A stretch of 64,000 nucleotides of DNA from Mobula birostris (Eukaryota), in NCBI RefSeq assembly GCF_030028105.1, contig NC_092375.1, positions 141,139,035-141,203,034 of the forward strand, given 5' to 3'. Both the position numbers and the translations under genes were made by a program. How positions within the stretch are numbered: the stretch's first letter is position 1; each line of letters opens with the position of its first letter. Shown here piece by piece: positions 7,381 to 54,700 of this stretch. Under the pieces are notes generated by a model, which was given only the letters and a program-made list of their open reading frames with translations, had not been told where the DNA came from and searched no databases.

Positions 7381-7606
7381 ACTATAATTTGATCCATAAT
7401 ATATTAAACAATAATATACAGCAAAGGACAGAACATTTACAAACAATCAAATCTCCCATTTTACAACAAAATGTACAGTCAGGAGCTCCAGGCCCCTCAG
7501 ACTTGGACATGAGTGAGTACAGTACAATTGTTAACATCTTGTAGATTCTGAATGAGGTCTTCTTGCGTTCACATTGAGTTCAGACTCTGTGGAGTTTCTT
7601 TCACGG

Positions 7607-10600
7607 TCAGTGCAGGGCTCTCGAGTCCTCATTTTGTTCCTGGAATGGAAAGATGAATAGATTTGTAATTTTCATCTGGACTGAGCTCACTCTAACATCA
7701 ATGTTCTGTCATTAGTTTTAATGATGATCACATCAGACACAAAGCTTTAGTTTATACTTACATTCGAAGGCTCCTCCATTGATAATTCTGTTGATTTGCT
7801 TTTCATCTGTTTTATGAGATAAAATTTTGCAGTATTAGAAATCATTTCTATGTACAAAGTCAAATGAGGTTTAGTTTGAAATTGGGTGTGTGAAATCACT
7901 TTAATTTCGGAACTGTAGGTTAGTGAGAAATCTACAGCAAACACCACTATCAATTTGAATTTCAGCAAAATATAAAGGCAATGGGACTCTAAGATTGAAT
8001 GTTACAAAGGATGGCATTGGATTGGAAAGGGTGCACAAAAGATTTATGGGAATGTTACTAAGTCTGGAGGGCTTTGGTTATAAGGAGAGGCTGGATAGGC
8101 TTGGAGTTGCTTCCGTTGACCATAGGAAGATGGATAAAGATGTAATTTAGATTTATAAAATTATAAGACGGAAAGCCAAAGTATTTTCCAGAGGGTAGGA
8201 GACTCTAAAACTGAAGAGCGCAAGTTTAAAGTCAGCGAGGAGAGATTTAGAAGTGATCTGAAGGGAATATTTTTTCACAGTGATGGTGGATTTATGGAAT
8301 GATCTGCCAGAGGAATTGGCAGAGGCAGGTACAATGATGGCACTTATAATGCATTTAGACAGCTCCATAGATCGGAAAAGTTTCAAGGGATATGGGTCAA
8401 AAGCAGGGAAATTTCAATAAGCTGATTTCGGCAACTTGATCAGCACAGATGAACTGAATCAAATGATCTGTTACTGCATTGTATATCCCTATGACTCTAT
8501 TAATCTAAGAGAGATGATTCTTTCACCAATTGGTCTTGACTGGGCTGACATATCTCAGTCTCTGTGCCAGTAATTATATACAATTAAATGAGGAAATTTA
8601 AGAGATGCTCCTTTCATGAAGCCACAGTTATATCTTTCTACAGACCATGATTGTCCCCTGGAGAGAGTGCCTTTTCTAGCTTTACTTCAATATTAAGTGA
8701 AGATCAAACTCAAATTCAGGCTGAAGTTGGGCATCATCAGGAATTGAATGGAGAATATTCTATAAAATTTGTGCATTTATATGCCCTCTCTGTCTATCTC
8801 TAGATCTGGGGTTCCCTACCTTTTTTATGCCATGGACCAATATTATTATGCAAGGAGTCCATGGGCCTCAGGTTGGGAACCCCTGCTCGAGATAGTCATT
8901 AATTAAGTTTACACAAATTAGGTTTCATCACTATATTATGGTTGAAAATCAATAGATAAAATTTCCAAGATTAGACTTACATCAGAAGGCTCTTCGACTG
9001 ATGTCACTTTTGACTTGCTGTCTACCTGCATGAAAAAAATCAATATTTATATACTTAGCATGTTTATTAATAAAGGTTTGTGGAGTAACCTTTGAACAAA
9101 TCTTTAATGATTGAATTAGAAATGACCTTAGATATATCAGGCTTTGAGATTCAGTACAGCAGTGGATAATTGCTCACCAAAGCAATTACGATCTGCAACA
9201 GCGATCAACATAGCTTGGATGTTGTGAGATTTGGGGTGGGGTGGGGTCAGAAGATAATTCAAGAAACAGTGTCATTCTCACCGACATTTGGTCTGTAATT
9301 GGTGAATGTTACAGACACTGCCCTCATGTCTAACACCCATTCTAGTTGATATCTAGATCATTTTATCCTTGAGAGAACAAACTCATTCTCTGTATTGGAG
9401 CCTCAACAATTTGCCTCTCAGCTCAACTTCCCCATAGGAATCAAATCACCGAATCCCTTTCTCAATGCACTGACCAAAGTAAATGGTTCTCTTTCCCTCT
9501 CTTCTAACATGGTCAAGTCCAAGATGTTAAACATTTTAACTTGCAATCAAGATCAAATAGATCATCAGCATTTTTTTCCATTCATACTCACATCAGCTGA
9601 ATCCTCAAGAGATGTCTCTTTTGATTTGTCTTTTTCCTGTATGGAAATAATATTTACATATATATTTAGTACAGGACAGTGAGAAATTTTGAAAATACAT
9701 AAACTGAAAAATTCCCAGCTTGCACAAGTATTAAATATTGAAATATAATGGAGTCTATGTTCACTCTGGGCTTTTCAGCAGCAAATGCAGCAGGTCATTG
9801 AGAAGGCAAATTGCCTTTATGCAAGAAGGCTTGAGAACAAGAGTAGTACAGTTGTTTCAAGCTCTGGTGAGGATTGTGTAGTTTTGGTCGGCTGATCTGA
9901 AAAAGGATATGCTTGAGAAAGAGGATGAAGCATGGTTCTGCCTGGGTAGAGTCTGGGATGGTGCATTTGGAACATGAGGAATAATCTCTATTATTTACAG
10001 CTTGGAAGAATGAGAGGTAATTGCCTTACAGTGAACAAAATTATGAGAGGTCTTGGCTAGTTAGAAAGGTGGGATATTTTGCCTATCTAAGGAGTTGAGA
10101 GCTTGGGTTGCAGTCTCAGGATAAGGGATTGGCCAATTGGAAATGTGGTGAGATGCAATCTCTTCACCAAGATGGTGAATTTTTGGAATTTGCTACCCCA
10201 CAGAGCTGTGGAGGCTCATTCACTGAGTTAATTCAAAACAGTAACTGGTGGATTGATGGATATTAAGGGAATCAAGAATTACAGTGTTACCATAGGAAAA
10301 TGGTTTGAGGTAGAAGTTAATATTCAATATTTTCTCAGTCTTCTCTCTCTCTCACCCACAGTCTGGAACAGGCCTATTATAAAGTAAGACCCTTGGTATT
10401 CTGACAGTTCAGTCAAGGTTTCACATCTTACTGAGAATCTGAAGGTAACATTTTCCAAATTAAACTTACGTTTAGAGATTCTTCTTCCAGTGAATTTTCT
10501 TCTGACTGGCTTTCGACCTACGTAAAAAAACATAAACATCCTAACATTAACACAGTAGGACAGAAAGCATAAATAGATGACCTCCAATAAATAGAAAACA

Positions 10601-13365
10601 TTAATAGTTTACCTCCAAAAAGTAGACAAGAATACTTAATGCTAAATAAAGGATTGTCAATCCTGACAATGCCGAATGAAGATCCTATGACCGATCATAA
10701 AATTGCAGAAGCCTCAATAAAAGCCCCAGTCTCTATAGTACACCAATGTTCAGAAAAGTGCCTGGCTAAGTGTCTGGTGTAGAGTCAATGGATGTTCCTA
10801 CAATAGGCGGCACAGCTCCGATTATCGTATTTTTTATTGAATCCGTGGTTCCCCTCCGGGAATCAATAGAACATGACTCCCATTGCTGCAAGTTTTACAG
10901 GTACTCCTCTTTCAGTCCTGTTCTACTGGTGGTCAGTTCCTCTTTAGTAGAGAATAAACTCAGCATGCTCTGAAGTCAAAGGTTACTAAAAACTCCATTA
11001 CCAACAACTGAGATCAACAAGAAAAAAAATCTGATGAATTATTAAGTAATACTCACATTTAAGGATATCAGTAAGATTGAAAGAGTGCAGAGGAGATTTA
11101 CTAGGATGTTGCTGGGTCTTCAGGAGTTGAGTTACAGGGAAAGATTGAACAGGTTAGGACTTTATTCCTTGCAGCGTAGAAGAATGAGGGGGGATTTGAT
11201 AGAAGTTTACAAAATCATGAGGCGTATTGACAGAGTAAATGTGAGAAGGCTCTTTCCACTTAGATTAGGAGAGATAAATACGAGAGGACATGGCTTTAGG
11301 GTGGAAGGGGAAAGGTTTAGGGGGAACATTAAGGGGAACTTCACTCAGAGAGTGGTGGGAGTGTGGAACGAGCTGCCATCTGACGTGGTAAATGCGGGCT
11401 CACTCTTAAGTTTTAAGAATAAGTTGGATAGATACATGGATGGGAGAGGTTTGGAGGGTTATGGACTGGGTGCAGGTCAATGGGACTAGTGGAATAAAGT
11501 TTTGGCACAGACTAGAAGGGCCGAATGGCCTGTTTTCTATGCTGTAGCATTCTATGGTTCAATGGTTCTACGTTAGAATCCTCACCCAGCACATCAGACC
11601 AGGATAATATGCCATCTCACCCACTATTTCTAATGAAGAGCTGAACATTTCATTGCTAGCAATTATAATCACTTCATTACTAACAACTGAGATCAACAAG
11701 AAAAAACATCTGCTGAAGTATTAATTAATACTCACATTTGGGGTTTCCTCTAGTGATGTCTCTTTTGATTTGGTTTGGGCCTGTAAGATAAAGATATTTA
11801 TATTTAGATCTTCAGCATACCTCACTAATATAATGTTTAGTGAATGATCTTGTGTTAGAAATCCCATTGACCAGACTGCCGATACTATACCTCAATTCTG
11901 GTTTCACTTGATTCTTTTGAGTCACTCTCACTGTCAACTGTCTTCAGACCGTCACACTCCACATCGACATCAGCTACCTTATCAGCAAAAAATTCCACAT
12001 GGCTTTTGCAAAACCCTTTCTCCTGTTGGAATGAAGCATAGTGCAAGGAAATTATTGATGATTCCAAGCAAGAATGTAAATCAAAGTGATTATGATCTAA
12101 CCCAATTCTTAGTCTTTCCTTCCATATCTATACTCATTTCTATGAAATAGGTTGTAATTAAAGCTCGTGTTTTAATGCTAATACATACGCGGACTTGTGT
12201 GATCTAAGATATTACTCTGGACTCACCGCAATGCTTTTAGAGCAGAAAGAGCAACTGGGATCATCAAATTCCTGCCCAGAATTCTTGGAGCAGACAGTTT
12301 CTTTCACAGAGAACGTTAAATCCATGCTGTAGGATAGTTTACCTGTGCGATATGTCTGAAGAAAGGAAAATAGTTTATTAGTGCATTGTTATGTTTGGAG
12401 CTCTTCCAATGGTCTGACAAAGAGCAGAGCTACACAGGGCTTTATTTCCAGCAGATAGTTACATTGACAGTGTCTGAGTCATCAGCCAAAATAGACAAGA
12501 GACTTAATTTGATTGATAGTAAAATTGCAACTTAAACCATCATGATAGGAATATCAGTTTGCAGGAAATCCTAATTATTGGTGGAAAATAACAAAGAAAA
12601 TTTGAAAACCTTTCAGGGACTTCCAGATCAATGAATGGTAGAACATCCAATCTTAATTCCAAAACATTGATCCAATCAGAGATATACAATTCAAATATTG
12701 ATTGAGAATTTAAGTTCCTAATCTGATATTCAGAGTAAGTTCTGCATGTAATGTAATATTCAGCTCCAATTTAGTACTTGGTTACCACCATATCTTAAAC
12801 ATAACCTTATACTTAAAATTGCACAGTTTGAGGCCACTTAGCCCATAAAGCCTACACTGGCTCTAAGCAAAACAATCCCATCAATTCCATTCCCCCTTTC
12901 CTAAAATACCCATAATACTGTATGCTATTGTTCCAACTATGTCAGCATCTCCCCTTTGATTTTTTTTTGCTGTTAACCTACTCTCAGGCTAATTTTTAGT
13001 AGCCTATTAATCTACACTCTGATGCATCCAAGGGCTGTGAAACACAATTCTCCAAGAACACACTTACATTTGTTACACCTCTTCTGGTGATACCACAGAG
13101 ATTGGTGATGTCGGAGATTTCATTCAGCTTATTAACTGAGGCTCTCAGAGCTTCCTTGGTGCTTGGCACTCCTGCAGAGAGAGAGGGAAATTTGTACAAG
13201 ACATTCTAACCAACTTCAGCAATTTTTTCTTGCACATGGGTGAAATATCACTGACTGAAGCTCAGTACCAATAACTCATTGCTCTCTAGGGTCCCACTCT
13301 CCCCAGTACTTACCTGAGCAGCAGAGAATCTGCACAGCAATGATGGCGAGCACGCAAGTTTTCAT
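7607..13365 (-). CDS. SPP2: Secreted phosphoprotein 2 (Spp24)-like, copy 1, 225 aa, with acidic S-x-E repeat tail
   Basis: All introns GT-AG. Exons: 13365-13314 MKTCVLAIIAVQILCCS/G; 13171-13068 VPSTKEALRASVNKLNEISDITNLCGITRRGVTN; 12355-12227 TYRTGKLSYSMDLTFSVKETVCSKNSGQEFDDPSCSFCSKSIA; 12022-11891 EKGFCKSHVEFFADKVADVDVECDGLKTVDSESDSKESSETRIE; 11780-11736 AQTKSKETSLEETPN; 10517-10470 VESQSEENSLEEESLN; 9636-9592 EKDKSKETSLEDSAD; 9025-8981 VDSKSKVTSVEEPSD; 7806-7762 MKSKSTELSMEEPSN; 7639-7607 EQNEDSRALH*. Matches remembered SPP2 motifs (CSG signal end, AL.ASV.K.N, L.FS..ET.C.K.SG..D...C.F, C-x17-C, Ser/acidic patch). Structure conserved in three copies. Confidence 0.9.
8806..8885. mobile_element. 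80-bp hAT-type MITE in intron 8 of copy 1
   Basis: TIRs CTGGGGTTCCCTACC and GGTTGGGAACCCCTG. 8-bp TSD ctctagat / ctcgagat. Absent from copies 2 and 3. Confidence 0.85.
10895..10969 (-). CDS. Candidate alternative terminal exon of copy 1 (SMLSLFSTKEELTTSRTGLKEEYL*)
   Basis: ttcag acceptor in phase 0 with exon 5. AATAAA at 10833-10838. Same frame open in copies 2 and 3. Confidence 0.62.
   Translation of the reverse strand, partial: SMLSLFSTKEELTTSRTGLKEEYL
11061..11570 (+). mobile_element. CR1 3' fragment in intron 5 of copy 1
   Basis: ORF 11085-11489 (QRRFTRM..SYRERL..RRRMRGDLIEVYKIM..TRGH..FTQRVVGVWNELP) with a tandem tail. Confidence 0.92.
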
Positions 13366-13452
13366 TCTGCCTTGTGTGGAACCAACTGGTTTCTCAGAAT
13401 GAAGGAAATGCTTCTCTCTCTCTTGATCTGCTTTCACTTTGCTGCTTCAGAC

Positions 13453-24000: not shown

Positions 24001-25064
24001 ATAGCTCTGTGTATCTCCTCTCTCCTCATTGTCGACTTCACCTTAGCAAGATTCAACCATTTGGCCACAGCTACCAATTCCGATTTCCTGGCATCCTTTA
24101 TAAATTCCTCAGCCTCCATTTCTGCTGTTTGCCTTTTCTTTCTTTCGGGAATTTTAACCCAACCAATTTACTCCGTCCCAAATTTAGCGTTCAAAATCCC
24201 GGACGAGAACCTCACTTATGTTACATACCCCGTAACTGGGTTGCCAAACCAGCAGAAATGGATCACTCAGTTGGAGTCTGGATTACTAGAACTAAGAAAG
24301 TTTTATTAGAGAAACAAGCAACACAGTAATCGAAAGGATAATAAATGCAACAGTTCAGCAATGATAAACCCACATGTGCACAGAATTAAGATAACAGCAT
24401 CAATCAAGCTCTATCGTTGTCTAGGGATAAATGACCAATTTCAAAGTGACACAAAGTTCAGTCCAATTTAGTAGTTCAGTTCGCAGTAATCGTTGCCATG
24501 GCGATGGACAACGTGGGGGGAGAGAGAGAGAGAACGGGAACGACTGATCATTCAGACACGGCTTCCACTCACAGACTGGCGATATGGCTCACAAGCAGCT
24601 TTCGGGTGGGTCCTTGGTGATGTCACCTGAGGTCACCGACTGTGACCCCTCCTCCAGATGCGGTCGATCCTCTGCAGTGAACTCGGCACCCAAGCAAGGG
24701 CGGACACACACCAGGTTCCCGCTGATTGTACCTTTCCACCCTGTGCGTTGTCCGGTACTTCCCACTGACTTGTGAGAGGCGCACCGCTTCCAGGGTCTCG
24801 TTACCTCGGGTGTCGTGTGTGTCCTGCCTTAGCGAACCTGTCGTTTTTTATCCCCCTGCTGGGGTATCGCCTGTCCATCACTTCAAACAGTTCAGGGTTC
24901 AAAGGGGGAGCCGCTCCAGACAGCTCTCTCTCTCCCGTCCCTTCATTACACATCTCCAGATGCTGTTTCATTGTGTTCCTTATCTCTCTCTTGAAGACAG
25001 GTGGCAGACCAACTGCTGATCACACAGGACAGCTAACATCTTATCTATCTGTATTCTCGTCACA
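21055..25064 (-). mobile_element. Non-autonomous Gypsy (Gmr1-like, SCAN-type gag) LTR retrotransposon
   Basis: Near-identical LTRs at 21055-21910 and 24219-25064, both TG...CA. 4-bp TSD AGAC. tRNA-Pro-like PBS at 24196-24214. Polypurine tract AAAGGAGGGAAG next to 21910. Gag and protease present; no RT, RNase H or integrase. Confidence 0.95.
22167..24119 (-). pseudogene. gag: Gypsy gag-protease with in-frame stops
   Basis: Coiled coil with EREEKERDRQL repeats, SCAN-like capsid (YELVPEAYRQRFR..LILIEQFK), CCHC knuckle CYNCGKVGHFASRC, then RI*RDTG protease motif and GVEVLLGND. Stops at 23856 and 22824. Confidence 0.9.
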
Positions 25065-27994: not shown

Positions 27995-28123
27995 NNNNNN
28001 NNNNNNNNNNNNNNNNNNNNNNNNNNNNNNNNNNNNNNNNNNNNNNNNNNNNNNNNNNNNNNNNNNNNNNNNNNNNNNNNNNNNNNNNNNNNNNNNNNNN
28101 NNNNNNNNNNNNNNNNNNNNNNN
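27995..28123. other. Assembly gap (129 N)
   Basis: Run of N inside a minus-strand LINE 3' end. Confidence 1.
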
Positions 28124-33426: not shown

Positions 33427-36400
33427 TTAGTGATGGGATCTCGAGTCCTCATTTTGTTCCTGGAATGGGAAGATGAGCAGATTTGTAATCTTCAGCTGGA
33501 CTGAGCTCACTCTGATGTCAATGTTTTCTCATTAGTTTTAATGATGATCATATCAGACACAAAGCTTCAGTTTATACTTACATTTGAAGGCTCCTCCGAT
33601 GATAATTCTGTTGACTCGCTTTTCATCTGTTTTACAAGATAAAATCAGATTTGCACATCAGTGATAGATCCACATCAAAAACTTTACAATCAATCTGAAT
33701 TTCGGCAAAATATTAATGAAATCAATTGCAAAGAATGTCATTATGTTGAAGAAGATGCAAACAAGAATTGTGAAGATATTACCAAGACTGGAGGGTTTGT
33801 TGTGTAAGAAAAGGCTGGATAGGTGAGGAGTTGATTCCCTGAAGTGCAAGAAAGTAGGTGAAGATGTAATAGTGGTTAATAAAACTTGGAGAGGAATAGA
33901 TAAGGCAAATAGGGCAGAGGAGTCTAAAGTGAGAGAACATAGATTTAAAGTGCAAGGGGAAGATTCAAAAGTGAGGTGAGGAGCAACTTTTTCAAACAGA
34001 GATGGTGGTTTAATGGCATGAATGGCCAGTAGAAATGTGAGATTTAAAATGCATTTGGACAGTCCATAGATAAAAAAAGGTATTTAAGAGATATGGGCCA
34101 AATATAGGAAACTTGTTCAGCACAGATGAATTGGACCAAGGACCAGCACCTGCATTGTATAGCTCGATGATTCTATTAATTTAAGAGGGGTGATTGATTA
34201 CTTCATTTGTTCTCGACTGTGCTGACATTGGGTGCTTAAGGTTGTTATAGGCGGGGGCTGTAGTTGGGATAGGCTCCCACTACCTATTAAATACTCCCAA
34301 TAGCATATATTTCAAATAGCCTCTTGACAACCAAACCCAGCTCCAGGCCTTCACATGTACCTTAGCTACTAAGCCAATGGAACTGTTTCTACTGAAAGGA
34401 GGAGGGGCAAAGATGGTTTACTGGCACTTTAAAACTAGTCGCTTCAGGCACATGGGGCTCATCAGCTGTGGTTAGCAGTTCACCTTGGAGAATGAATACT
34501 CTGATCTCAAACCTCCACTGCTTTGCGTCTACAGCCACCCATGGGAATGGCTTTCAGAATAAACCACAAGGAAAGCTCTGGATCTGCAGTCCCTAAGGCA
34601 GTCCTATGTTGAGTTCAAAACTGACTGGCAACTCCTGCGGCACCACTGATGCCAAACTGTATCAGTCTCTGTCGTCCTTTGGACTCACCAGCTATGTGGA
34701 GAGGGTAAGGCTGCTACATGGACAACAGCTTGCTCTCCATATCATACTGCCCTGGCTTGTGTGCCACTTAGACAGCTGAGACACCACCTCCATGGTTGAC
34801 CGGACCGGTGGAAAGCCTCAGTGCTGGCATCTCCCTGCACCATACACTTCTAGACTCAGGGCCAATAGTTATAGTGATTTAAATGAGGGGATCCTCCTTT
34901 CATGAAACTACCAGAAATATCAATCCACAGGCCATGATTGTCTGCAGGAGAGGGTGTCCTTCCAAATTCTATTTCAAAATTTAGTGAAGAACAAACTCAC
35001 ACTCAGGCTAATGATGGGCATCCTCAGGACATGCACAGAGAATTTGTGCATTAATATGCCATCCTCTCCCTTCTCCAGGTAGTCATTTAATTATGTTTAC
35101 CCAGTTTAGTTTTCATCGGTATATTATGGTTGAAAATCAATAGATGAAAATTCCAAGATTAGACTTACATCAGAAGACTCCTCGACTGATGTCTCATTTG
35201 ACTTGCTCTCTACCTGCATGAAAAGATCAAAATTTATATGCTCAGCATGTTAATTTATGAAAGTTTGTGAAGTAACCTGAGAACAAGCCCTTCAAAGATT
35301 TAATTATTTATAAACCTAGCTATATCCCCTTTATTTATTTATTACCGCAGTGGAGAAATGCTCACCAGAACAACTAAATTTTGCAAAAATAATCATATCA
35401 CATAATGTGAGGTGTGACGGGTCTCTAGATAATTTGGGGAAAATGTCACTCTCACCCAATTAATTGGTATTGTTGTATTGAACCTGTTCTGCACCATCAC
35501 TTGGTCTCTTTAATTGGTGAGTGTTACAGACATTGCCCTCATGTCTAGCACCCAATCTTGTTGCTATCCAGCTCGCTTTATCCTTGAGAGGAAGCAAACT
35601 CACTTTCTGTTTTGGAGCCCCTCAGTCAAACTTCCCCTCAGGAATCAAACATCGAAATACCTATCTCAATAGACTGACCTAAAGAGAGCGGTGCAGACTT
35701 GATGGCCAAATGGTCTTATTCTGCTCCTATATCTTATATTTTATGGTCTAAGTGGCCCTTTCTCCCTCTACTCTGACATAGTTGAATGCAATATGTTTAA
35801 CATATTTACTTAGCGTTGAGATCAAAAAGATCATCAGTTTTTTTTCCATTTATACTCACATCAGCTGAATCCTCAAGAGATGACTCTGTTGATTTGTCTT
35901 TTTCCTGTACGGAAATTATATTAATTTGTTTAGTACAAGACAGTGAGGAATTTTGAAAATATATAAACTGAAAAATTCCCAGTTTGCACAAGTACTAAAT
36001 ATTGAAATATAATTCAGTCTTTGTTCACTCCGGGCATTTCAGCAGAAAATGCAGCAGGCCATTGGGAAGGCAAATTATCTTTATTGCAAGAGGACTTGAA
36101 AAGAAGAATACTACAATTGTATCGAACCCTGGTGAGGATTGTGTGGTTTTGGTTGACTTATCTGAAGAAAGATATGTTTGAGACAGAGGATACAGCAAAG
36201 TTCTACAAGTATACTACCCATGAAGGTACATCTGCCACATGAGGAGAGATTAAGTGCGATAGACTCTACTCATTACAGATTGGAAGAATGAGAGGAAATA
36301 CCATGAGCAAAATTATGAGAGGTCTTCAATACTTATCAGGGAAAGGGTTTTCACCAATCCAAGGAGTTGAGACTTGGCTTACAGTCTCAAAATAAGAGCT

Positions 36401-38959
36401 TGGTCAATGAGGAATGAGGTGAAACTCAGATGGTGAATCTTTGGAATTCTCAACCCTGGAAAGCTGGGGAGCCTCAATCGCAAGTTCATCCAAAACAGGG
36501 TTGATGAATTGTTCGATTTTAAGGGAATCAGGGCTTACAGTGTTACGACAGGAAAATTGCTTTGAGGTAGAAGCTAATATTCAATATCTTCGCTGTCCTC
36601 TTTCACCCATTGTCTAGAACAGGCCTAGAATGAAGTAAGATCCTCAGACTCTATTCTGACAGATCAATCTAGGTTTCATATCTTATTGAGAAACTGGATA
36701 TCAAATCCCAAATTAAACTTACGTTTGAAGATATTTCCAGTGAAGTTTCCTCTGAACTGCTTTTCACCTGTATAAAAACACGTACATGTATATCATTAGT
36801 ACAAGGTATATTTAGTAAATCTGAAACAAATAATAGACCAGAATGTTGAATTATCAATGGAGAGTTATTAATCCTAACATTTCTGAATGATAATTCAATG
36901 AATTAGCGTTAGATTGCAGAAGCTTCAATAAAAATTATCTCTATACTACACTGATGTTCAAAATAAATGTCAGGAGCAGAATGAATGGATATTCCTACAA
37001 CAGTTGCTATAGGCATCATTGCCATCTGTTTTATTGAATCCATGGAAGGATTGGTACTTCGTGAATCTCAGTGATGAGAGTTTGTCAGACACTTCTCCTG
37101 TAGTCCCGTTCTGCTGATGCTCAGTTCATCTTCAGCAGAGAACAAACTCATCATGCACTGAAATCTAATATTAGAATCCCCTCCCTACACATCAGACTGG
37201 GACACATGCTGTCTCATCCACTATTCCTAACGGAGAACTTAACATTTCATTGAAAATAATTATAATCACTTCATCACGAACAATTGAGATCAACAAAAAA
37301 AATCTGATAAATTACTGATTAATACTCACATCTGAGGTTTCCTCAAGTGATTTTTCTTTTGATTTGCTTTGTGCCTGTAAGATAAAGATACTTATTTTCA
37401 GATCTTCAGCATACATAAACAATGAAATGTTCAGTAAACAATCTTGTGTTAGAAATTCCATTGCCCTGAATTGTATGAATGCAGTTACCTCGATACTGTT
37501 TTCATTTGATTCTGTTGAGTCACTCTCGCTGTCAACTGTCGTCAGACCGTCACACTCCACATCAACGTCAGCTACCTTATCAGCAAAAAATTCCACGTGG
37601 CTTTTGCAGAACCCTTTCTCCTGTTAGTATGAAGCAGAATGTAAGGAGATTATAAATAATTCCAAGCAAGACACAAAATCAAAATGATTATGCTCTAACT
37701 TAATTCTTAGCCTTTACTTTGATATAACCACATATGTATGGCCATTTCTATCAAACAGGTTGTAATTAAAGTTTGTATTTTGTTGCTAATACATACACGG
37801 ACTTGCATGATCTAAGATATAACTCTGGACTCACCGCAATGTTTTTATGGCGGAAAGAGCAACTGGGATCATCAAATTCCTGTCCAGAATTCTTGGAGCA
37901 GACAGTTTCTTTCACGGAGAATATTAAATCCACGCTGTAGGACAGTTTACCCGTACGATATGTCTTAAGAAAGGGAAGGATAATTGGTGAATTATTACCT
38001 CTGGTGTTTTTCCACTGGTCTGATAAAACTCAGAGTTACAGAGGCTTTAATTCCAGCAAATGGTTACAGTGGTAGCGTCTGAGCAGTCAACCAAAATGAA
38101 CAGGAGGATGACTTTGCCCAGTGGTAAAACTGTCACTTAAACCATCACAACAGGAATACTCAATTTGCATGAATCCATAATTATTGGAGGAAATTAACTA
38201 ACAAATTTGGAAAACTTCCAGTGACATCAAAATCAAAGATTGGCTGAACTTCCAAACTTAATTCCAAAGCTTTGGTCATATCAAGTTGCACAACTCAAAC
38301 ACTGAAGGAGAGTTAAAAAGCTGACCACTCTGTACACAATATAATATTCAGCTCCCGTTGAAAACTTAGATTCCATCTTATCTTAACGTTTATCTCATAC
38401 TTTGAATTATGCAGCTTGAGGCCACTCAGCCCTTCAGGCATATACTGGCTCCCAGGTGACCAATCCCATCAATTCCACTCTCCCTCTCATCAAATCCCCA
38501 TAATGTTGCAACTTACTCTCTCTATCACAAACATCATCTCTCCTTTCATTGGTTTTTTGCTGTTAAACTACTCTTAGGGTAAGTTTAAGTAGACAGTTAC
38601 CCTGCACTCAGACACATCAATAGTTTGTGAAACACAATTAGCCAAAGGCACACTTACATTTGCCACGCCTCTCCTGGTGATACCACAGAGGTTGGTGATC
38701 TCGGTGATTTCATTCAGCTTTATCACTGAGGCTCTCAGAGCTTCCTTGGTGCTTGGCACTCCTGTAGAGAGAGAGAGGGGAAGTCATACAATATGCATTC
38801 TAACAAACCACTGTGAATTCTTCTCACACCTGGGTGAAATGTCGTTGCTTGAAGCTCAGTACCAACAACTTCCTGCTCTCTGATTTCCCACTCTCCCCAG
38901 TACTTACCTGAGCAGTAGAGGATCTGCACTGCAGCAATGGCAAGCAGGAAAGTTTTCAT
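33427..38959 (-). CDS. SPP2: SPP2-like copy 2, 224 aa
   Basis: Exons: 38959-38908 MKTFLLAIAAVQILYCS/G; 38761-38658; 37963-37835 (..SVKETVCSKNSGQEFDDPSCSFRHKNIA); 37620-37489 (EKGFCKSHVEFFADKVADVDVECDGLTTVDSESDSTESNENSIE); 37374-37330 AQSKSKEKSLEETSD; 36767-36723 VKSSSEETSLEISSN; 35904-35860 EKDKSTESSLEDSAD; 35213-35169 VESKSNETSVEESSD; 33626-33582 MKSESTELSSEEPSN; 33459-33427 EQNEDSRSHH*. Frame intact, all introns GT-AG. Confidence 0.9.
34229..34820. mobile_element. Unclassified ~590-bp retroposon in intron 8 of copy 2
   Basis: Flanked by a 10-bp TSD gtgctg(a/g)cat. Empty site in copy 1 (~8545). Its right end survives in copy 3 (~50270-50310). Confidence 0.6.
37068..37157 (-). CDS. Candidate alternative terminal exon of copy 2 (CMMSLFSAEDELSISRTGLQEKCLTNSHH*)
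   Basis: tttcag acceptor, phase 0, AATAAA at 37030-37035. Same length and stop position as in copy 3. Confidence 0.65.
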   Translation of the reverse strand, partial: CMMSLFSAEDELSISRTGLQEKCLTNSHH

Positions 38960-48778: not shown

Positions 48779-51700
48779 TTAGTGCTGGGCTCTCGAGTCC
48801 TCATTTTGTTCCTGGAATGGGAAGATGAATAAATTTGTAATTTTCAGCTCGATGGAGCTCACTCTGATGTCAATATTTTGTCATTAGTTTTAATAATGAT
48901 CACATCAGTCACAAAGCTTCAGTTTATACTTACATTTGAAGGTTCCTCCAGTGATAATTCCGTTGATTTGCTTTTCATCTGTTTTATGAGATAAAATCAG
49001 ATTTGCACATCAGTGATAGATCCACATCAGAAACTTCACAATCAATCTGAATTTCAGCAAAATATTAACGTAATGGGATTCTAAGATTGAGTAATACCAA
49101 GTATGCCATTATCTTGGAGAAGGTGAAAACAAGAATTATGAAGATATTACCAGTACTGGAGGGCTTGTGTTATAAGGAGAGGCTGGATAGGTGAGTTGAT
49201 TCCCTGGAGTGCAAGAAAGTATGGGAAGATAAAATTATGGGGTGAAAAGATATGGCAAATAGCCAAAGTAATTTTTTTTAGAGTAGAGGAATCTAAAATG
49301 AGAAAGCATAGGTTTAAAATGCAAGGGGAGAAATTCAAAAGTGATGTGACGGGCAACTATTTCAAACAGAGATGGTGGGTTTATGGAATGAACAGTCAGT
49401 AGAATCGGTAGAGACAGGTTGAATTGTGACATTTAAAATGCATTTGGACAGTTCCATAGATAAGAAAGATTTTTAAGAGATATGCCCTGGCTTAGTACTG
49501 GCTTGCATAACACACTTGAGGACCTTGAGGACCTGAGGAGAGCTAAGGTACCGGTGACCCCTGTTTCCATCCATGGGATCAGTGTGGACATGGTGGAGGA
49601 TTACAAATACCTGGGGATACAAATTGACAATAAACTGGACTGGTCAAGGAACACTGAGGCTGTCTACAAGAAGGGTCAGAGCCGTTTCTATTTCCTGAGG
49701 AGACTGAGGTCCTTTAACATCTGCCGGACGATGCTGAGGATGAGTCTGTGGTGGCCAGTGCGATCATGTTTGCTGTTGTGTGCTGGGGCAGCAGGCTGAG
49801 GGTAGCAGACAGCAACAGAATCAATAAACTCATTCGTAAGGCCAGTGATGCTGTGGGGATGGAACTGGACTCTCTCATGGTGGTGTCTGGAAAGAGGATG
49901 CTGTCTAAGTTGCATGCCATCTTGGACAATGTCTCCCATCCACTACATAATGTACTGGGTGGGCACAGGAGTACATTCAGCCAGAGACTCATTCCACCGA
50001 GATGCAACACAGAGCGTTACTGGAAGTCATTCCTGCCTGTGACCATCAAACTTTACAACTCCTCCCTTGGAGGGTCAGACACCCTGAGCCATTAGGCTGG
50101 TCCCGGACTTATTTCATAATTTACTGGCATAATTTACATATTACTATTTAACTATTTATGGTTTTATTACTATTTATTATTTATGGTGCAACTGTAACAA
50201 AAACCAATTTCCCCCGGGATCAATACAGTATGACTATGACTATGATTATGACACAGACAGCTGGGACACAACTTTCGTGTTCAACCCGACCAACGAAGGT
50301 CTCAGTGCTGATATCTACACCATACACTTCACCTCATAGTTATAGTCAATTAAATGTGAGAAATGTTGTGGATCCCCCATTCATGAAACTACTAGAAATA
50401 TCAATCCACAGACCATGATTGTCCTCAGGAGAGAGTGTCCTTTCAAATTCTATTTCAAAATTTAGAGAAGAACAAACTCACACTCAGGCTAATGATGGGC
50501 ATCCTCAGGACATGCACAGAGAATTTGTGCATTAATATGCTATTCTCTCCCTGATCTCTGTAGTCATTTAACTATGTTTGCCCAAAATAGGTTTTATCTG
50601 TATATTATGGTTGAAAATCAATAGATGAAATTTCCAAGATTAGACTTACATCAGAAGGCTCCTCGACTGATGTCTCTTTTGACTTGCTCTCTACCTGCAT
50701 GAAAAGATCAATATTTATATGCTCAGCATGTTAATTAATGAAAGTTTGTGAAGTAACCTGAGAACGAAACTAGAAATATCTTGATTATTAATTTATTACT
50801 GCAGTGGAGAAGTCCTCGCCAGAAGAATTACATTCTGTATAATGATCAACATAGCCGGGAAAATGTGAGGTGTGGAGTGTCTGGAGATGAATTGGGGAAA
50901 ATGTCACTCTCACCCAATTAATTGGCATTGCATGTATTGAAGCTGCTCTGCACCATCACTTGGACTCTGTAATTGGTGAGTATTAGAGACTTTGCCTTCA
51001 CGCCTAGCACCCAATCCAGCTCGCTTTATCCTTGAGGGGAAGCAAACTCATTCTCTATATTGGAACCCCTCAGTCAAACTTCCCAACAGGAGTCAAACAA
51101 CATATTCCCTTTCTCAATGCACTGACCTAATGTTAGTGGAGCAGATTCAATGGGCAAAATGGCATAATTCTTCTCCTTTGTCTTGTATCTTATGGTCTAA
51201 ATTGCCCTCTCTCCTATTCTGACAAAGCCGAATTGAATATGTTCAACGTATTTACTTAGCGACGAGGTCAAAAAGATCATCTGAATTTTTTTAGTTATAC
51301 TCACATCAGCTGAGTCTTCAAGAGATGTCTCTTTTGATTTGTCCTTTTCCTGTATGGAAGTAATATTTATATGTTTAGTACAAGACAGTGAAGAATTTTG
51401 ATGATATATAAACTGAAAAATCACAGTTTGCACAATTATTAAATATTGAAATATAATGTAGACTTCGTTCACTCTGGGCATTTCAGCAGCAAATGCAGCA
51501 GGCCATTAGGAAAGCAGATTATTTTTATAGCAAGAGGACTTGAAAAGAAGAGTACTACAATTGTATCGAGCCCGGTGAGGGTTGTGTAATTCTGGTTGCT
51601 TATCTGAAGAAGGATATGCTTGAGACAGAGGATATAACAAAGTTATACTAGTATAGTGCCCATGAATGTGGATCTGTCACATGAGGAAAGATTAAGTATG

Positions 51701-54700
51701 ATAGACTATTCATTACAGATAGGAAGAATGAGATGTGATTGCCTAACCATAAGCAAAATTGTGAGAGGGTTTGATTGGATATCGGGGAAGGGTTTTCACC
51801 TGTCTAAGGAGATGAGAGCTTGACTCATAGTATCAATATAAGAGCTTGGTCAATGAGGAATGAGGTGAAACTCAGATGGTGAATCTTTGGAATTCACTAC
51901 CCCCAGAGAGCTGTGGAGGCTCAATTGCAAGTTCATTCAAAACAGAGATTGGTGGATTGTAGGATATTAAGGGAATCAAGGCTTACAGTTTTATTATAGG
52001 AAAATGGTTTGAAGTGGGCGCTAGCTAATATTCAATATTCTCTCTCAACCCCGCTGTCTGGAACAGGGCAAGAATTAATTAAGATCCCTAGACTCTATTC
52101 TGACAGATCAATCTAGGTTTCACATCTTATTGAGAAACTGAAGATATCAACTCCCAAATTAGACTTACATTTGAAAATAATTCCAGTGAAGTTTCTTCTG
52201 ATTTGCTTTTGCCTATATAAAATATGTACATTTATAGCATTAGTACGAGGTATATTTAGTAAATCTAAAGCACTATCACCGAATAATAGACCAGAATGCT
52301 GAATTATGAATGGAGCTATTAATCCTGACATTTCTGAATGATAATCCCATGAACTAGCGTTAGATTGCAGAAGCTTCAATAAAAATTCTCTCTATACTAC
52401 ACTGATACTCAAAAAAAATGTCAGGAGCAGATTGAATGGATATTCTGACAATAGGTGAAACAGGCATCGTTACCATTTGTTTTATTGAATCCATGGAAGG
52501 ATTGGTACTTAATGACTCTCAGTGGTGAGAGTTTGTCATACACTTCTCTTGTAGTTCTCTTCTGCCGATGCTCAGTTCATCTTCAACAGAGAACAAACTC
52601 CTCATGCACTGAAACCTAATATTATGATCCCCTCCCTACACATCAGACTAGGACAAGACCACAGACCACAACATCATAATACATAGGAGCAGTATTAGGC
52701 CATCTAGCCTATCGAGTTTGCTCCGCCATTCAATCATGGCTGATTTTTTTTTCTATCTCCTTCTCAACCCCAGTTCCCAGCCTTCTCCACGTACCCTTTG
52801 GTGCCACATCCAATCAATAACCTATCAATCTCTGCCTTAAATACACCCAACGACCTGGCCTCCACAACTGCATGTGGCAACAAATTCCACAATTTCACCA
52901 CACTTTGGCTAAAGAAATTTTTCCGCATCTGCTTTGAAAGGGCGCCCCTCTATCTTGAGGCTGTGCACTCTTGTCCTAGACTCTCCCACCATGGGAACCA
53001 TCCTTTCCACATCTTCTCTGTCTAAGCTTTTCAACATTCGAAAGGTTTCAATGTGATCCTCCTTCATCCTTCTGAATTCCAGCGACTGCATGTATAACCC
53101 CTTCATTCCTGGAATCATCCTTGTGAACCTCCTCTGGACCCTCTCCAATGCCAGCACATCTTTTTTAAGATGAGGGGCCCAAAACCTTTCACAATCATCA
53201 AGGTGAGGCCTCACCAGTGCCTAATAAAGCCTCAGCATCAAAACCTTGCTCTTTTATTCTAGACCTCTTGAAATGAATGCTAACATGGCATTTGCCTTCC
53301 TCACCACCAACTCAACCTGCAAATTAATCTTAAGAGTGGACTCCCAAGGACTCCCAAGTCCCTCTGCATCTCAGATTCCTGGATTTTCTCCTCATTTAGA
53401 AAATAACCCACACATTTATTTCTACTACCAAAGTGCATGACCATGCATTTTCCAACATTGTATTTCATTTGCCACTTTCTTGCCCATTCTCCTAATCTGT
53501 CTAAGTCCTTCTGCTTCCTACCTGTTTCCTCAACATTACCTGCCCCTCCACTAATCTTTCTATCATCTGCAAACTTGTCAACAAAGCCATCTATTTCATC
53601 ATCTAAATCATTTATATACAGCATAAAAAGAAATAGTCCCAACACCGACCTCTGCGGAACACCACTAGTCACTGGCAGCCAACCAGAAAAGGACCCTTTT
53701 ATTCCCACTTGCAGCCTCCTTCCAATCAGCCAATGCTCTAACCATGTTAGTAACTTTCCTCTAGTACCATGGACTCTTAATTTGGTAAGCAGCCTCATGT
53801 GTGGCACCTTGTCAACGACCTTCTGAAAGTCCGAATGCACAAAATTCCCTTTATCTATCCTACTTGTAACCTCTTCAAAGAATTCTAACAGGTTCACCAG
53901 GCAGGATTTTCCATGAAGGAAACCATGCTGACTTTGTATTATCTTGTCCTGTGTCACCAAGTACTCCATCACCTCGTCCTTAATAACTAACTCTAACATC
54001 TTCCCAACCACTGAGGTCAATCTAACTGGTCTATAATTTCCTTTCTGCTGCTTTCCTCCTTTCTTAAAGAGTGGAATAACATTTGCAATTTTCCAGTCCT
54101 CTGGCACCATGCCAGAGTCCAATAATTTTTGAAAGATCATTTCTAATGCCACCACAATCTCTAACGCAACCTCTTTCAGAACCCTAGGGTGCAGTTCATC
54201 TGGTCCAGGTGACTTATGTACCTTTAGGTTTTCCAACTTTTTGAGCACCTTCTCTCTTGTAACAGTAACTGCACCCACTTCTCTCCCTTCACACACTACA
54301 ACATCAGGCATACTGCTAGTGTCTTCCACAGTAAAGACTGACGCAAAATACTCATTCAATTCAGCAGCCATCTCCTTGTCCCCCGTTATTATTTCTCTTG
54401 CCTCATTTTCTAGCAATCCTGTATCCATTCTTATTTCTCCTTTATTTTTAACTTGAAAAATCTTTTACTATCCACTTTGATATTACTTGCTAGCTTGCTT
54501 TCATATTTCATCTTTTCCCTTCTAATGATTTTTATAGTTGCTTTCTGTAAGTTTTTAAAAACTTCCCAATCCTCTATCTTCTGACTAATTTTTGCTTTGT
54601 TGTATGCCCTTTCATTTGCTTTTATAATAGCTTTGACTTCCCACGTCAGCTACGGTTGTACTATTTTACTATGTGTGTATTTCTTCATTTTTGGAATATA

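What the first reader, a model, noticed from the sequence alone, without database searches (positions are those of the whole stretch)
7762..11780. Casein/SCPP-like phospho-tail built from five duplicated phase-0 45-nt exons on a cystatin scaffold
Seen: exons 5-9 of each copy are 45 nt (one is 48, one 44), phase 0-0, consensus xxSKSKETSLEEPS(D/N). Most carry two S-x-E sites plus a primed S-x-pS site, and some junctions create more (PSN|E). With exon 4 this gives more than ten candidate phosphoserines. Knowledge: Fam20C phosphorylates S-x-E/pS, and caseins and other SCPP proteins grew by duplicating small phase-0 S-x-E exons to bind calcium phosphate. Cartilaginous fishes were reported to lack the bony-vertebrate SCPP family. 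Inference: convergent invention of an SCPP/casein-like Ca-phosphate carrier from SPP2. Candidate roles are mineralisation of tesserae, teeth or denticles, plasma mineral chaperoning, or, if this is a viviparous ray, a casein analogue in uterine milk.
Basis: partly seen in the sequence, partly recalled or inferred. Interest (0 to 1): 0.92.

Follow-up and report, generated by a model that had tools for sequence, protein, structure and literature searches.

The report
Manta ray SPP2 genes' phospho-tail exons
Three neighbouring giant-manta copies of the mineral-regulating gene SPP2 carry a real acidic, serine-rich tail built from five tiny duplicated exons, but this gene family, its tail and its link to cartilage mineralisation were already published in 2026.

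Summary
The window holds three tandem minus-strand SPP2 (Spp-24) genes. Their exons match RefSeq proteins of Mobula birostris exactly. Each gene has four core exons (signal peptide and cystatin-like domain), five mini-exons and a short last exon. The mini-exons are 45 nt, except one of 48 nt and one broken exon of 44 nt. All have AG/GT borders and lie in phase 0. A profile of the mini-exons finds exactly 15 copies, all on the gene strand. Each unit carries two invariant S-x-E sites. The tails hold 9-17 S-x-E sites and the folded part holds none. Spliced contigs from one study join exons at or within a few bases of the modelled borders.

Debiais-Thibaud et al. (BMC Biol 2026) already described the tandem spp2 expansion in cartilaginous fishes, including Mobula hypostoma. 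They also described the S-x-E-rich tails, the putative Fam20C sites and expression in mineralising chondrocytes. What I found in none of four searches is the exon-level anatomy. One 15-residue unit equals one phase-0 cassette exon, the array dates back to early batoids, and annotated isoforms skip single units.

The uterine-milk idea has no support, because egg-laying skates have equal or longer tails. The genes are not SCPP members.

The parts
13314..13365 (-). Copy A exon 1: ATG plus hydrophobic signal-peptide-like N-terminus, ends in phase 1
   Evidence: GT donor present. The M. hypostoma orthologue P0058 starts with this exon.
13068..13171 (-). Copy A exon 2 (104 nt), start of the cystatin-like domain
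   Evidence: One search shows AG/GT borders. The translation is 100% identical to P0060 and P0058. In run X1 a contig with 0 mismatches joins 13068 to 12355 (record 7).
12227..12355 (-). Copy A exon 3 (129 nt), core of the Spp-24 domain
   Evidence: Pfam PF07448 scores 28.3 bits (cutoff 26), E 2e-6.
11891..12022 (-). Copy A exon 4 (132 nt): last disulfide loop plus the conserved Ser/Asp/Glu-rich stretch
   Evidence: X1 record 6 covers 11907-12021 with 0 mismatches.
11736..11780 (-). Copy A exon 5, mini-exon, 45 nt, phase 0
   Evidence: It sits in P0060 at residues 201-215.
10470..10517 (-). Copy A exon 6, mini-exon, 48 nt (16 residues)
   Evidence: P0060 residues 216-231. The M. hypostoma orthologue model P0058 lacks it.
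9592..9636 (-). Copy A exon 7, mini-exon, 45 nt
   Evidence: Joints fall at 9636 in run X2.
8981..9025 (-). Copy A exon 8, mini-exon, 45 nt
   Evidence: P0060 residues 247-261. Read depth here is masked by a neighbouring repeat.
7762..7806 (-). Copy A exon 9, mini-exon, 45 nt
   Evidence: The exon 9/exon 10 joint is seen in runs X1 and X2.
7607..7639 (-). Copy A exon 10: last 10 codons plus TGA. AATAAA lies at about 7380.
33427..38959 (-). Copy B, whole gene. Exons: 38959-38908, 38761-38658, 37963-37835, 37620-37489, mini-exons 37374-37330, 36767-36723, 35904-35860, 35213-35169, 33626-33582, and last exon 33459-33427.
   Evidence: One search shows all AG/GT borders and a 675-nt CDS. Exons 4-9 are found as exact strings in P0030 (XP_072115692.1, 224 aa).
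48779..57114 (-). Copy C, whole gene. Exons: 57114-57063, 56920-56817, 55885-55757, 55540-55409, mini-exons 55294-55250, 52212-52169 (44 nt, frame-breaking), 51349-51305, 50694-50650, 48978-48934, and last exon 48811-48779.
   Evidence: The RefSeq model P0053 (XP_072115693.1, 194 aa) uses exons 1-4, 7, 8, 9 and 10 and skips exons 5 and 6.
11035..11066 (-). Relic resembling the 3' end and donor flank of a mini-exon, next to a highly repeated transposon
   Evidence: nhmmer E 0.26. blastn gives 90.6% over 32 nt to the exon 5 flank.

Best explanation
The window holds three tandem paralogues of SPP2 (secreted phosphoprotein 24) of the giant manta ray. They are of the multi-copy acidic-tail type that the 2026 paper calls spp2.3. 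Each encodes an N-terminal signal peptide, a cystatin-like Spp-24 domain with conserved cysteines, and a long acidic tail that is probably disordered. After the Ser/Asp/Glu stretch at the end of exon 4, the tail is encoded by five 45-nt phase-0 exons. These exons arose by exon duplication. Each contributes a 15-residue unit with two fixed S-x-E sites, plus S-x-S sites that could be primed.

Inferred mechanism. The protein enters the secretory pathway and the Golgi kinase Fam20C phosphorylates the S-x-E serines. The resulting polyanionic tail binds calcium phosphate or apatite and so tunes where and how fast cartilage matrix mineralises. The cystatin-like domain keeps the loop that binds BMP-2 in mammals. 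Because every unit is a phase-0 cassette, exon gain, exon loss or exon skipping changes the number of phosphate-bearing units without breaking the frame.

Shown here: gene structure, family membership, motif enrichment, purifying selection, splicing at the modelled borders, and conservation across elasmobranchs. Taken from the literature: expression in mineralising chondrocytes (catshark, thornback ray) and the Fam20C motif. Inferred: phosphorylation, mineral binding, and the direction of the effect (promotion or inhibition).
For: Pfam Spp-24 scores above the curated cutoff for exon 3 alone and for the full proteins. Exon translations are found as exact strings in Mobula birostris RefSeq proteins: P0060 (copy A, exons 2-10), P0030 (copy B, exons 4-9) and P0053 (copy C, exons 1, 3, 4, 7-9). 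There are 15 of 15 mini-exons with AG/GT borders, and introns 2-9 are in phase 0. The profile search finds only these 15. S5, S9 and E11 are invariant in 13 of 13 units, and S-x-E is enriched over shuffles at 1, 0 and 4 of 10000. pN/pS in the mini-exons is 0.17-0.57 against 0.17-0.29 in the core exons. Mini-exon nucleotide divergence is about 10%, against 23-24% (A-B, A-C) and 13% (B-C) in sampled intron stretches. Run X1 has contigs with 0 mismatches that join exon 2 to exon 3 and cover exon 4. Exon 9/exon 10 joints with CT..AC ends occur in X1 and X2. Introns free of repeats have zero depth. All 120 listed of the 132 relatives at E<=1e-5 come from sharks, skates and rays, and 112 of the 120 are named 'secreted phosphoprotein 24(-like)'. 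Tails fit 21+15n+10 residues exactly in 31 of 51 proteins with the canonical end, with n from 1 to 5. Isoforms differ by exact 15- or 30-residue blocks in Amblyraja radiata and Hemitrygon akajei. Units e5, e6 and e9 match 1:1 between manta, stingray, electric ray and skate. PMC13188829 sections 6, 7 and 10 report spp2.2/2.3 in mineralising chondrocytes, SxE motifs as putative Fam20C sites, and no liver expression in catshark.
Against: No phosphorylation, calcium-binding or tissue data exist for manta. The run records are coded and their kind is only guessed ('RNA?'), and the tool calls X2 'probably DNA'. Both spliced-contig runs belong to one study. The X2 contigs carry mismatches (9 in 86 letters) and may come from other paralogues. 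Exon 5 of copy A has zero depth in X1, and exon 8 cannot be judged because of repeat depth. Copy C has a frame-breaking exon 6, and its RefSeq model skips exons 5 and 6, so not every copy carries five working units. The assignment to clade spp2.3 rests on the paper's description, not on its labelled sequences. In my tree the elephant shark protein grouped with a different subgroup, on a long branch. The effect on mineral could be inhibition rather than promotion, and the paper says so too. The best solved-structure match is only cystatin F at E 0.74.
Confidence: 0.72

Rival explanations
1. Matrix-anchored growth-factor trap. The main job lies in the cystatin-like domain, which binds BMP/TGF-beta ligands as mammalian Spp24 does. 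The phosphorylated tail only tethers the protein to apatite in calcified cartilage.
For: The disulfide loop C100-C118 is invariant in 38 of 38 aligned family members. PMC13188829 section 10 states that the C-terminal part of the cystatin-like domain binds Bmp2 and that pro- or anti-osteogenic effects depend on cleavage.
Against: This reading does not explain why selection keeps two S-x-E sites per unit, nor why the unit number varies from 1 to 5 in exact register, and up to six or seven in skates, while the domain stays constant. It is not exclusive of the best explanation.
Confidence: 0.15
2. Circulating mineral chaperone. The protein would be made in liver and carried in plasma as part of calciprotein-like particles, as mammalian SPP2 and fetuin-A are.
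For: This is the mammalian role of Spp2 as summarised in PMC13188829 section 10. The tail chemistry would suit it.
Against: Catshark liver and blood TPM are 0-0.22 for spp2.1, 2.2 and 2.3, against hundreds to thousands in cartilage (Table 2). No manta tissue data were available.
Confidence: 0.06
3. Casein analogue in the uterine milk (histotroph) of live-bearing rays. One or more copies would be secreted by the uterine villi to carry calcium phosphate to the embryo.
For: The only support is the chemical analogy with caseins and the fact, recalled, that mantas are live-bearing with histotrophy. Nothing here excludes extra expression sites.
Against: The same five-unit tail, or a longer one, occurs in Amblyraja, Leucoraja and Rhinoraja and in catsharks, all egg-laying by my recall. 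The three manta copies each have a 1:1 orthologue in M. hypostoma and lie in an ordinary batoid clade. The two papers listed that hold both 'histotroph' and 'trophonemata' with 'ray' do not contain 'secreted phosphoprotein'. The manta genome preprint has none of the words spp2, phosphoprotein, histotroph or calcif.
Confidence: 0.04
4. The mini-exons are annotation noise or decaying pseudo-exons with no function.
For: Copy C exon 6 is broken, being 44 nt with a stop at the exon 7/8 junction if included. Its RefSeq model drops two units. B-C exon and intron divergence are similar.
Against: 14 of 15 exons are intact with conserved splice sites. pN/pS is below 1. Positional orthology reaches across batoid orders. 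Spliced contigs exist.
Confidence: 0.03

Closest known systems
Chondrichthyan spp2 family, spp2.3-type duplicates (Debiais-Thibaud et al., BMC Biol 2026, PMC13188829)
   Same: Tandem duplicates of SPP2. [quoted passage not shown] The sister species Mobula hypostoma is in that paper's data set. Each window copy pairs 1:1 with a M. hypostoma protein.
   Different: The paper's main text never uses the words exon, intron, isoform or alternative splicing. Its supplements could not be opened. New here are the exon-level picture (one 15-residue unit equals one 45-nt phase-0 exon), the cassette-skipping isoforms and the positional orthology of units. M. birostris itself is not in the paper.
Bony-vertebrate SPP2 / Spp24
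   Same: Same Pfam domain, PF07448. Both are secreted, have a Ser-rich phosphorylated region after the domain, and are linked to mineral metabolism and BMP binding (PMC13188829 sections 7 and 10).
   Different: It is a single gene made mainly in liver. Human SPP2 has 7 coding exons for 211 residues (PMC4602186 passages), against 10 coding exons here. The tail is Ser-rich and then Arg-rich and has no SxE unit array (PMC13188829 section 7). I could not inspect bony-fish exon structures.
SCPP genes, including caseins and the elasmobranch scpp
   Same: Secreted acidic proteins with S-x-E Fam20C sites that act on calcium phosphate. The genes are made largely of small phase-0 exons and evolve by tandem duplication (PMC9122587 passages). 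That caseins grew by exon duplication is recalled, not read.
   Different: Descent differs. SCPPs come from the 5' exons of SPARC-L at the sparc-L locus and have no folded domain. The genes here carry a cystatin-like Spp-24 domain, and their first intron is in phase 1.
Cathelicidins
   Same: A four-exon core encodes a signal peptide and a cystatin-like (cathelin) domain followed by a variable C-terminal part. There is weak Pfam similarity.
   Different: PF00666 scores 16-18 bits, below its cutoff of 21. The tail is strongly acidic, with net charge -16 to -23, not a cationic peptide.

Membership tests
SPP2 / Spp-24 | Spp-24 cystatin-like domain (Pfam PF07448) above the curated cutoff | tested here: met
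   Exon 3 alone scores 28.3 bits against a cutoff of 26. P0030, P0060 and P0053 score 39.6, 40.1 and 44.9 bits.
SPP2 / Spp-24 | [quoted passage not shown] | tested here: met
   C74, C87, C100 and C118 (P0030 numbering) are invariant in 38 of 38 aligned family members, and so is C43.
SPP2 / Spp-24 | N-terminal signal peptide (secreted protein) | not testable with these tools
   The hydrophobic 17-residue N-terminus encoded by exon 1 is read directly. No signal-peptide predictor was on hand.
SPP2 / Spp-24 | Serine-rich phosphorylatable region directly after the domain | tested here: met
   The end of exon 4 is a Ser/Asp/Glu-rich stretch conserved across the family. Phosphorylation itself was not tested.
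SPP2 / Spp-24 | Conserved locus (nme9/vps8/sh3bp4/arl4c neighbours) | not tested
   In the window I identified only the three spp2 copies and transposon ORFs. The flanking genes lie outside it.
spp2.3 clade of PMC13188829 | Groups with the paper's spp2.3 sequences; multi-copy, species-specific recent duplicates | tested here: inconclusive
   The copies lie in a starred 29-row batoid acidic-tail clade (98/97), sister to a single-copy basic-tail group. The paper's labelled sequences are in closed supplements. The elephant shark protein fell elsewhere, on a long branch.
SCPP (secretory calcium-binding phosphoproteins, including caseins) | Descent from SPARC-L 5' exons at the sparc-L locus, with the shared SCPP exon structure | tested here: not met
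   The proteins carry an Spp-24 domain, and all 120 listed relatives are chondrichthyan SPP24-family proteins. The definition is from PMC9122587 passages.
SCPP (secretory calcium-binding phosphoproteins, including caseins) | Introns predominantly in phase 0 | tested here: met
   Intron 1 is in phase 1 and introns 2-9 are in phase 0. [quoted passage not shown] The trait is shared here but does not show common descent.
SCPP (secretory calcium-binding phosphoproteins, including caseins) | Acidic secreted protein with S-x-E Fam20C sites | tested here: met
   The tails hold 9-17 S-x-E sites and are enriched over shuffles. This is a functional resemblance only.
Cathelicidin | Cathelin domain (PF00666) above cutoff plus a cationic C-terminal peptide | tested here: not met
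   PF00666 scores 16.1-18.3 bits against a cutoff of 21. Tail net charge is -16 to -23.

The most novel reading that the evidence does not exclude
In live-bearing myliobatiform rays such as the manta, the cassette array is spliced differently by tissue to set how many phosphate-bearing units each molecule carries. At least one of the tandem copies is also deployed outside cartilage, in uterine histotroph, as a casein-like carrier of calcium phosphate for the embryo. That would be a third independent origin of a milk-type Ca-P carrier, built on a cystatin scaffold. The weaker half alone, that unit number is tuned by regulated exon skipping, I put at about 0.45.
Probability: 0.05. Interest if true: 0.8.

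Novelty: already known. Interest (0 to 1): 0.3.

Why it matters
Cartilaginous fishes mineralise cartilage without bone and were long thought to lack the SCPP toolkit. The published spp2 expansion offers them a toolkit of their own. The exon-level view added here shows how that toolkit grows and shrinks. Each 45-nt phase-0 exon adds two fixed S-x-E sites, so duplication, loss or skipping of a unit changes the number of phosphate-bearing sites in steps. SCPP genes and caseins share the small phase-0 exon layout, and by my recall caseins grew in the same way, but here the array sits on an unrelated cystatin scaffold. This gives a clean, testable case of convergent gene architecture. It also gives a handle for asking whether unit number or copy number tracks skeletal mineralisation, by building constructs with 0-8 units. 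For the scan itself, the result shows that a reader working from raw sequence recovered a real and recently published biological story.

Tried and rejected
A solved-structure search with exon 3 alone gave only a chance zinc-finger match at E 3.9. With the family profile it gave only cystatin F at E 0.74. Neither decides the fold.

Pfam on exons 2 and 4 alone gave nothing, because the pieces are too short.

I considered a cathelicidin identity and rejected it. The Pfam score is below cutoff and the tail is acidic.

I considered SCPP or casein membership and rejected it on descent.

I looked for further mini-exon copies or relics on both strands and found only one weak relic.

I looked for further spp2-type exons, including basic-tail and K/G-rich types, with ten family proteins against the window. 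Only the three copies appeared.

As an indirect substitute I used RefSeq isoforms that differ by exact 15- or 30-residue blocks. I also used models that read through a donor site right after a unit border (tails ending in V-S-I-type read-through).

I did not retrieve bony-fish SPP2 proteins, because the listing limit of 120 was filled by chondrichthyan hits. For the bony-fish tail I rely on PMC13188829 section 7.

The second terminal exon noted earlier (10833-10969) is only 74-76% alike between copies, which is intron-like, and has zero depth in all four runs. I left it open.

Literature searches for the exon architecture of chondrichthyan spp2 found no paper describing it. Supplements of PMC13188829 were not opened and may hold gene-structure figures.
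Full report
WHAT IS THERE. The minus strand of the window carries three tandem copies of one gene: A at 13365-7607, B at 38959-33427 and C at 57114-48779. Direct repeats with 15-26 kb spacing first showed the triplication. Exon-by-exon blastn of copy A against the window located the other two copies. Each copy has ten coding exons. Exon 1 is 52 nt, holds the ATG and a hydrophobic N-terminus, and ends in phase 1. Exons 2, 3 and 4 are 104, 129 and 132 nt. Five mini-exons follow, and then a 33-nt last exon with the stop. All internal exons have AG before and GT after, and introns 2-9 are in phase 0. The mini-exons are 45 nt, except exon 6 of copy A (48 nt) and exon 6 of copy C (44 nt).

IS IT MORE THAN CHANCE. 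I built a nucleotide profile from the 15 mini-exons with 25-nt flanks. It finds exactly those 15 in the whole 64 kb on both strands (E 4e-23 to 4e-15, all on the minus strand). It also finds one relic at 11066-11035 (E 0.26). Across the 13 in-frame 15-residue units, Ser5, Ser9 and Glu11 occur in 13 of 13, Glu7 in 12 of 13 and Ser3 in 8 of 13. Each unit therefore carries two fixed S-x-E sites and usually one S-x-S site that could be primed. I then took the natural proteins that match the three copies. Their tails hold 12, 17 and 9 S-x-E sites and their folded parts hold none. Of 10000 shuffles of each tail, 1, 0 and 4 reach the observed count. Net tail charge before any phosphorylation is -19, -23 and -16.

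IDENTITY. Exon 3 alone matches Pfam Spp-24 (PF07448) at 28.3 bits, above the curated cutoff of 26. Cathelicidin scores below its cutoff. I ran an exhaustive phmmer search with exon 3 against 1.84 billion representatives. It gave 17 hits at E<=0.001, and the 11 I fetched are SPP24-like proteins. A follow-up search with one of them (P0002) gave 132 proteins at E<=1e-5. All 120 listed come from sharks, skates and rays, and 112 of them are named 'secreted phosphoprotein 24(-like)'. Exon translations are found as exact strings in three RefSeq proteins of Mobula birostris. Copy A exons 2-10 are in P0060 (XP_072115847.1). Copy B exons 4-9 are in P0030 (XP_072115692.1, 224 aa). Copy C exons 1, 3, 4, 7, 8 and 9 are in P0053 (XP_072115693.1, 194 aa). 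The window is therefore giant manta ray DNA, and the mini-exons are already part of public gene models. P0030 contains all five units. P0053 skips exons 5 and 6. P0060 contains all five but has an odd N-terminus taken from upstream exons instead of the signal-peptide exon. The full proteins score 39.6-44.9 bits on PF07448.

TRANSCRIPTS. One search for sequencing runs found six small runs whose kind is only guessed. I laid four of them on 7500-13400 at 90% likeness. X1 and X2 come from the same coded organism and the same study.

- In X1 a 285-nt contig with no mismatch joins 13068 to 12355, which is exon 2 to exon 3 exactly as modelled.
- Also in X1 a 162-nt contig with no mismatch covers exon 4.
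- Both X1 and X2 show the joint 7638/9 to 7761/2, with CT..AC ends. That is the GT..AG intron between exons 9 and 10.
- X2 also has joints at 9636 (5' end of exon 7) to 11735 (3' end of exon 5, within one base). That joint skips exon 6.
- A further X2 joint runs from 9636 to 10474, which is exon 6 with four replaced letters.
- Another runs from 7639 to 9596, which joins exon 7 to exon 10.
- Another runs from 7806 to an exon-5-like unit with ten replaced letters.
- The X1 bin depths of 1.0, 1.31, 1.31 and 1.4 over exons 10, 9, 7 and 6 equal 5.62 times exon length divided by 197. I infer from this one contig that covers those exons.
- Intron stretches free of repeats have zero depth. Two transposon stretches have depths in the thousands in all four runs.

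Caveats are as follows. The tool labels X2 'probably DNA'. The X2 contigs differ from copy A (9 letters in 86) and may stem from other paralogues. Exon 5 has no depth in X1, and exon 8 is hidden by repeat depth. All of this comes from one study. I read these data as showing that 45-nt units are spliced head to tail at or within a few bases of the modelled borders. They do not show which isoforms copy A makes.

SELECTION AND AGE. Among copies A, B and C, pN/pS in exons 5, 7, 8 and 9 is 0.57, 0.17 and 0.33. In the core exons it is 0.28, 0.29 and 0.17. Sampled intron stretches differ by 24%, 23% and 13%, against about 10% in the mini-exons. The counts are small and the three pairs are not independent. 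I built a careful tree of 60 family proteins on the 139 core columns. It pairs each window copy with a Mobula hypostoma protein: A with P0058 (100/98), C with P0144 (98/87) and B with P0145 (82/0). The triplication is therefore older than the split of the two Mobula species. Unit by unit, manta exons 5, 6 and 9 have their best match at the same position in the skate Amblyraja. The scores are 12, 12 and 12 of 15. In the electric ray Narcine they are 13, 10 and 11. The stingray Hemitrygon gives 13, 10, 12, 12 and 12 on the diagonal, with a higher off-diagonal 11 for exon 6. Shark units show no 1:1 pattern. A five-unit array was thus present early in batoids.

FAMILY-WIDE ARCHITECTURE. I examined 139 family proteins. 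Of these, 121 have the last-cysteine motif and 51 of those end with the canonical last exon. In 31 of the 51 the tail length is exactly 21+15n+10 residues, with n from 1 to 5. Most of the rest are off by one residue or carry read-through inserts. Four pairs of proteins differ only by an exact 15- or 30-residue block. These are three Amblyraja radiata isoforms (P0023, P0022, P0028) and two Hemitrygon akajei isoforms (P0032, P0044). The Hemitrygon block lost is the exon 6 unit, the same skip as the exon 5-to-7 joint in X2. Several models in sharks and rays end by reading through a donor site right after a unit border. That places introns at unit borders in those species too. This is indirect evidence, because I could not fetch their DNA. 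The elephant shark protein P0010 (XP_007905871.1) has a different repeat, rich in Ser-Arg-Glu, followed by one canonical unit.

WHAT IS ALREADY PUBLISHED. I read sections 6, 7 and 10 of Debiais-Thibaud et al., BMC Biol 2026 (PMC13188829) and searched the rest of its text. The paper reports that spp2 is a single gene in bony vertebrates but is tandemly expanded in cartilaginous fishes, into clades spp2.1, 2.2, 2.3 and Like. The duplicates keep the cystatin-like domain and accumulate many SxE motifs, which the authors take as Fam20C sites. Catshark spp2.2 and spp2.3 are expressed in mineralising chondrocytes and not in liver. Thornback-ray jaw cartilage expresses them too. The authors suggest that copy number may track mineralisation. 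Mobula hypostoma is in their phylogeny and synteny sets. The main text contains none of the words exon, intron, casein, isoform or alternative splicing. Leurs et al. 2022 (PMC9122587, abstract and passages) report an elasmobranch scpp gene. Human SPP2 has 8 exons, 7 of them coding, for 211 residues (PMC4602186 passages). The manta genome preprint holds none of the words spp2, phosphoprotein, mineralis-, histotroph or calcif-. Four searches for the exon architecture of chondrichthyan spp2 found no paper describing it.

HOW IT MOST LIKELY WORKS. Several things are shown here:

- These are secreted-type SPP2 paralogues.
- Their tail is a modular array of phase-0 exons with two fixed S-x-E sites per unit.
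- The tail is under purifying selection.
- It is spliced as modelled.
- It is conserved across elasmobranchs.

From the literature come the expression in mineralising cartilage in catshark and ray, and S-x-E as the Fam20C motif. The rest is inferred. Fam20C would phosphorylate the tail in the Golgi. The polyanionic tail would bind calcium phosphate or apatite in the matrix of calcifying cartilage and tune nucleation or growth. The domain would keep its BMP-binding loop. Exon gain, loss and skipping would set the number of phosphate-bearing units. Whether the net effect promotes or inhibits mineral is open. I put the whole reading at 0.72. The identity part is near certain, and the mineral-binding part is about 0.6.

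RIVALS. A growth-factor trap anchored by the tail (0.15) is compatible with much of the above. A liver-derived plasma chaperone (0.06) is contradicted by the catshark data. A uterine-milk carrier (0.04) has no support, and the same tail occurs in egg-laying skates and catsharks. The reproductive modes are recalled, except for the 'viviparous red stingray' in the listing. Non-functional exons (0.03) fits only copy C exon 6. That exon lacks one base of an A-run compared with the intact unit in M. hypostoma P0144, and it would cause a stop at the exon 7/8 junction.

COMPARISON AND VERDICT. The genes are members of the SPP2 family. The Pfam match, the cysteines and the Ser-rich region all fit, and synteny was not tested. 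They are probably of the spp2.3 type, although my tree could not settle this. They are not SCPP genes, caseins or cathelicidins. They work like acidic SCPPs and share the small phase-0 exon layout, which is convergence of architecture on a different scaffold. The central claims of the finding are already published, and the genes are annotated in RefSeq. I therefore rate it already known, with interest 0.3. The residue that I did not find in print is the cassette-exon anatomy, its age and the skipping isoforms.

LIMITS. As a result the exon structures of relatives and the fold and disorder of the protein were not examined. The spliced model was never joined for a search. Exons were searched singly, and full-length comparisons used the natural RefSeq proteins returned by the tools.

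Noticed in passing
After an AG it has a short open frame, a stop and an AATAAA. It is only 74-76% alike between copies, which is intron-like. All four runs show zero depth over it. In other species some SPP24-like models have a short basic tail straight after exon 4. One of these is annotated as an isoform X2 (P0006, Scyliorhinus torazame), so an alternative last exon may be an old feature of the family.
   Followed up: partly
window about 19.9-19.7 kb and 14724-14497 (minus strand), versus exon 1 at 13365-13314: The RefSeq model for copy A (P0060, 'uncharacterized protein', 286 aa) replaces the signal-peptide exon by 79 residues from far-upstream open stretches. The canonical exon 1 is intact, with ATG and GT donor, and the M. 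hypostoma orthologue uses it. The model probably reflects an annotation artefact or a transposon-driven alternative start.
   Followed up: partly
window 52169-52212 (copy C exon 6): This exon is one base short in an A-run compared with the intact 15-residue unit of M. hypostoma P0144. That protein then reads through into the intron. The missing base may be real decay of this exon or a homopolymer assembly slip.
   Followed up: partly
window 10990-11066 and 11678-11740, flanking 11061-11560: About 65-70 nt, covering the last bases of exon 5 and the start of intron 5, occur twice at about 90% identity. The two copies flank a transposon fragment with contig depths in the thousands in all four runs. 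This may be an unusually long target-site duplication or a broken exon duplicate.
   Followed up: no
window 13172-13246: The zero-mismatch X1 contig that joins exon 2 to exon 3 starts 75 nt inside intron 1, and no contig covers exon 1. This may be unspliced RNA, an internal start, or an assembly effect of short contigs.
   Followed up: no
window 21055-24819: Two direct repeats of about 600 nt (21055-21665 and 24219-24819, 95-98% alike) flank an ORF with SCAN and zinc-knuckle domains (22827-23831, minus strand). This looks like an LTR-retroelement remnant with a gag-like gene. I only observed it.
   Followed up: partly
window 53304-55135 and 42843-43655: These are LINE-type reverse-transcriptase and endonuclease ORF fragments. 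One set sits inside intron 5 of copy C and explains its 3-kb length. A related copy lies between copies B and C (repeat families D18-D20).
   Followed up: partly
protein P0010 (Callorhinchus milii XP_007905871.1): The elephant shark SPP24 tail is built from a different repeat rich in Ser-Arg-Glu, apparently also with a 15-residue period, followed by one canonical unit. Whether it too is encoded by 45-nt exons could not be checked.
   Followed up: no
window 27995-28123: A run of 129 N (assembly gap or mask) lies between copies A and B. I left it untouched.
   Followed up: no
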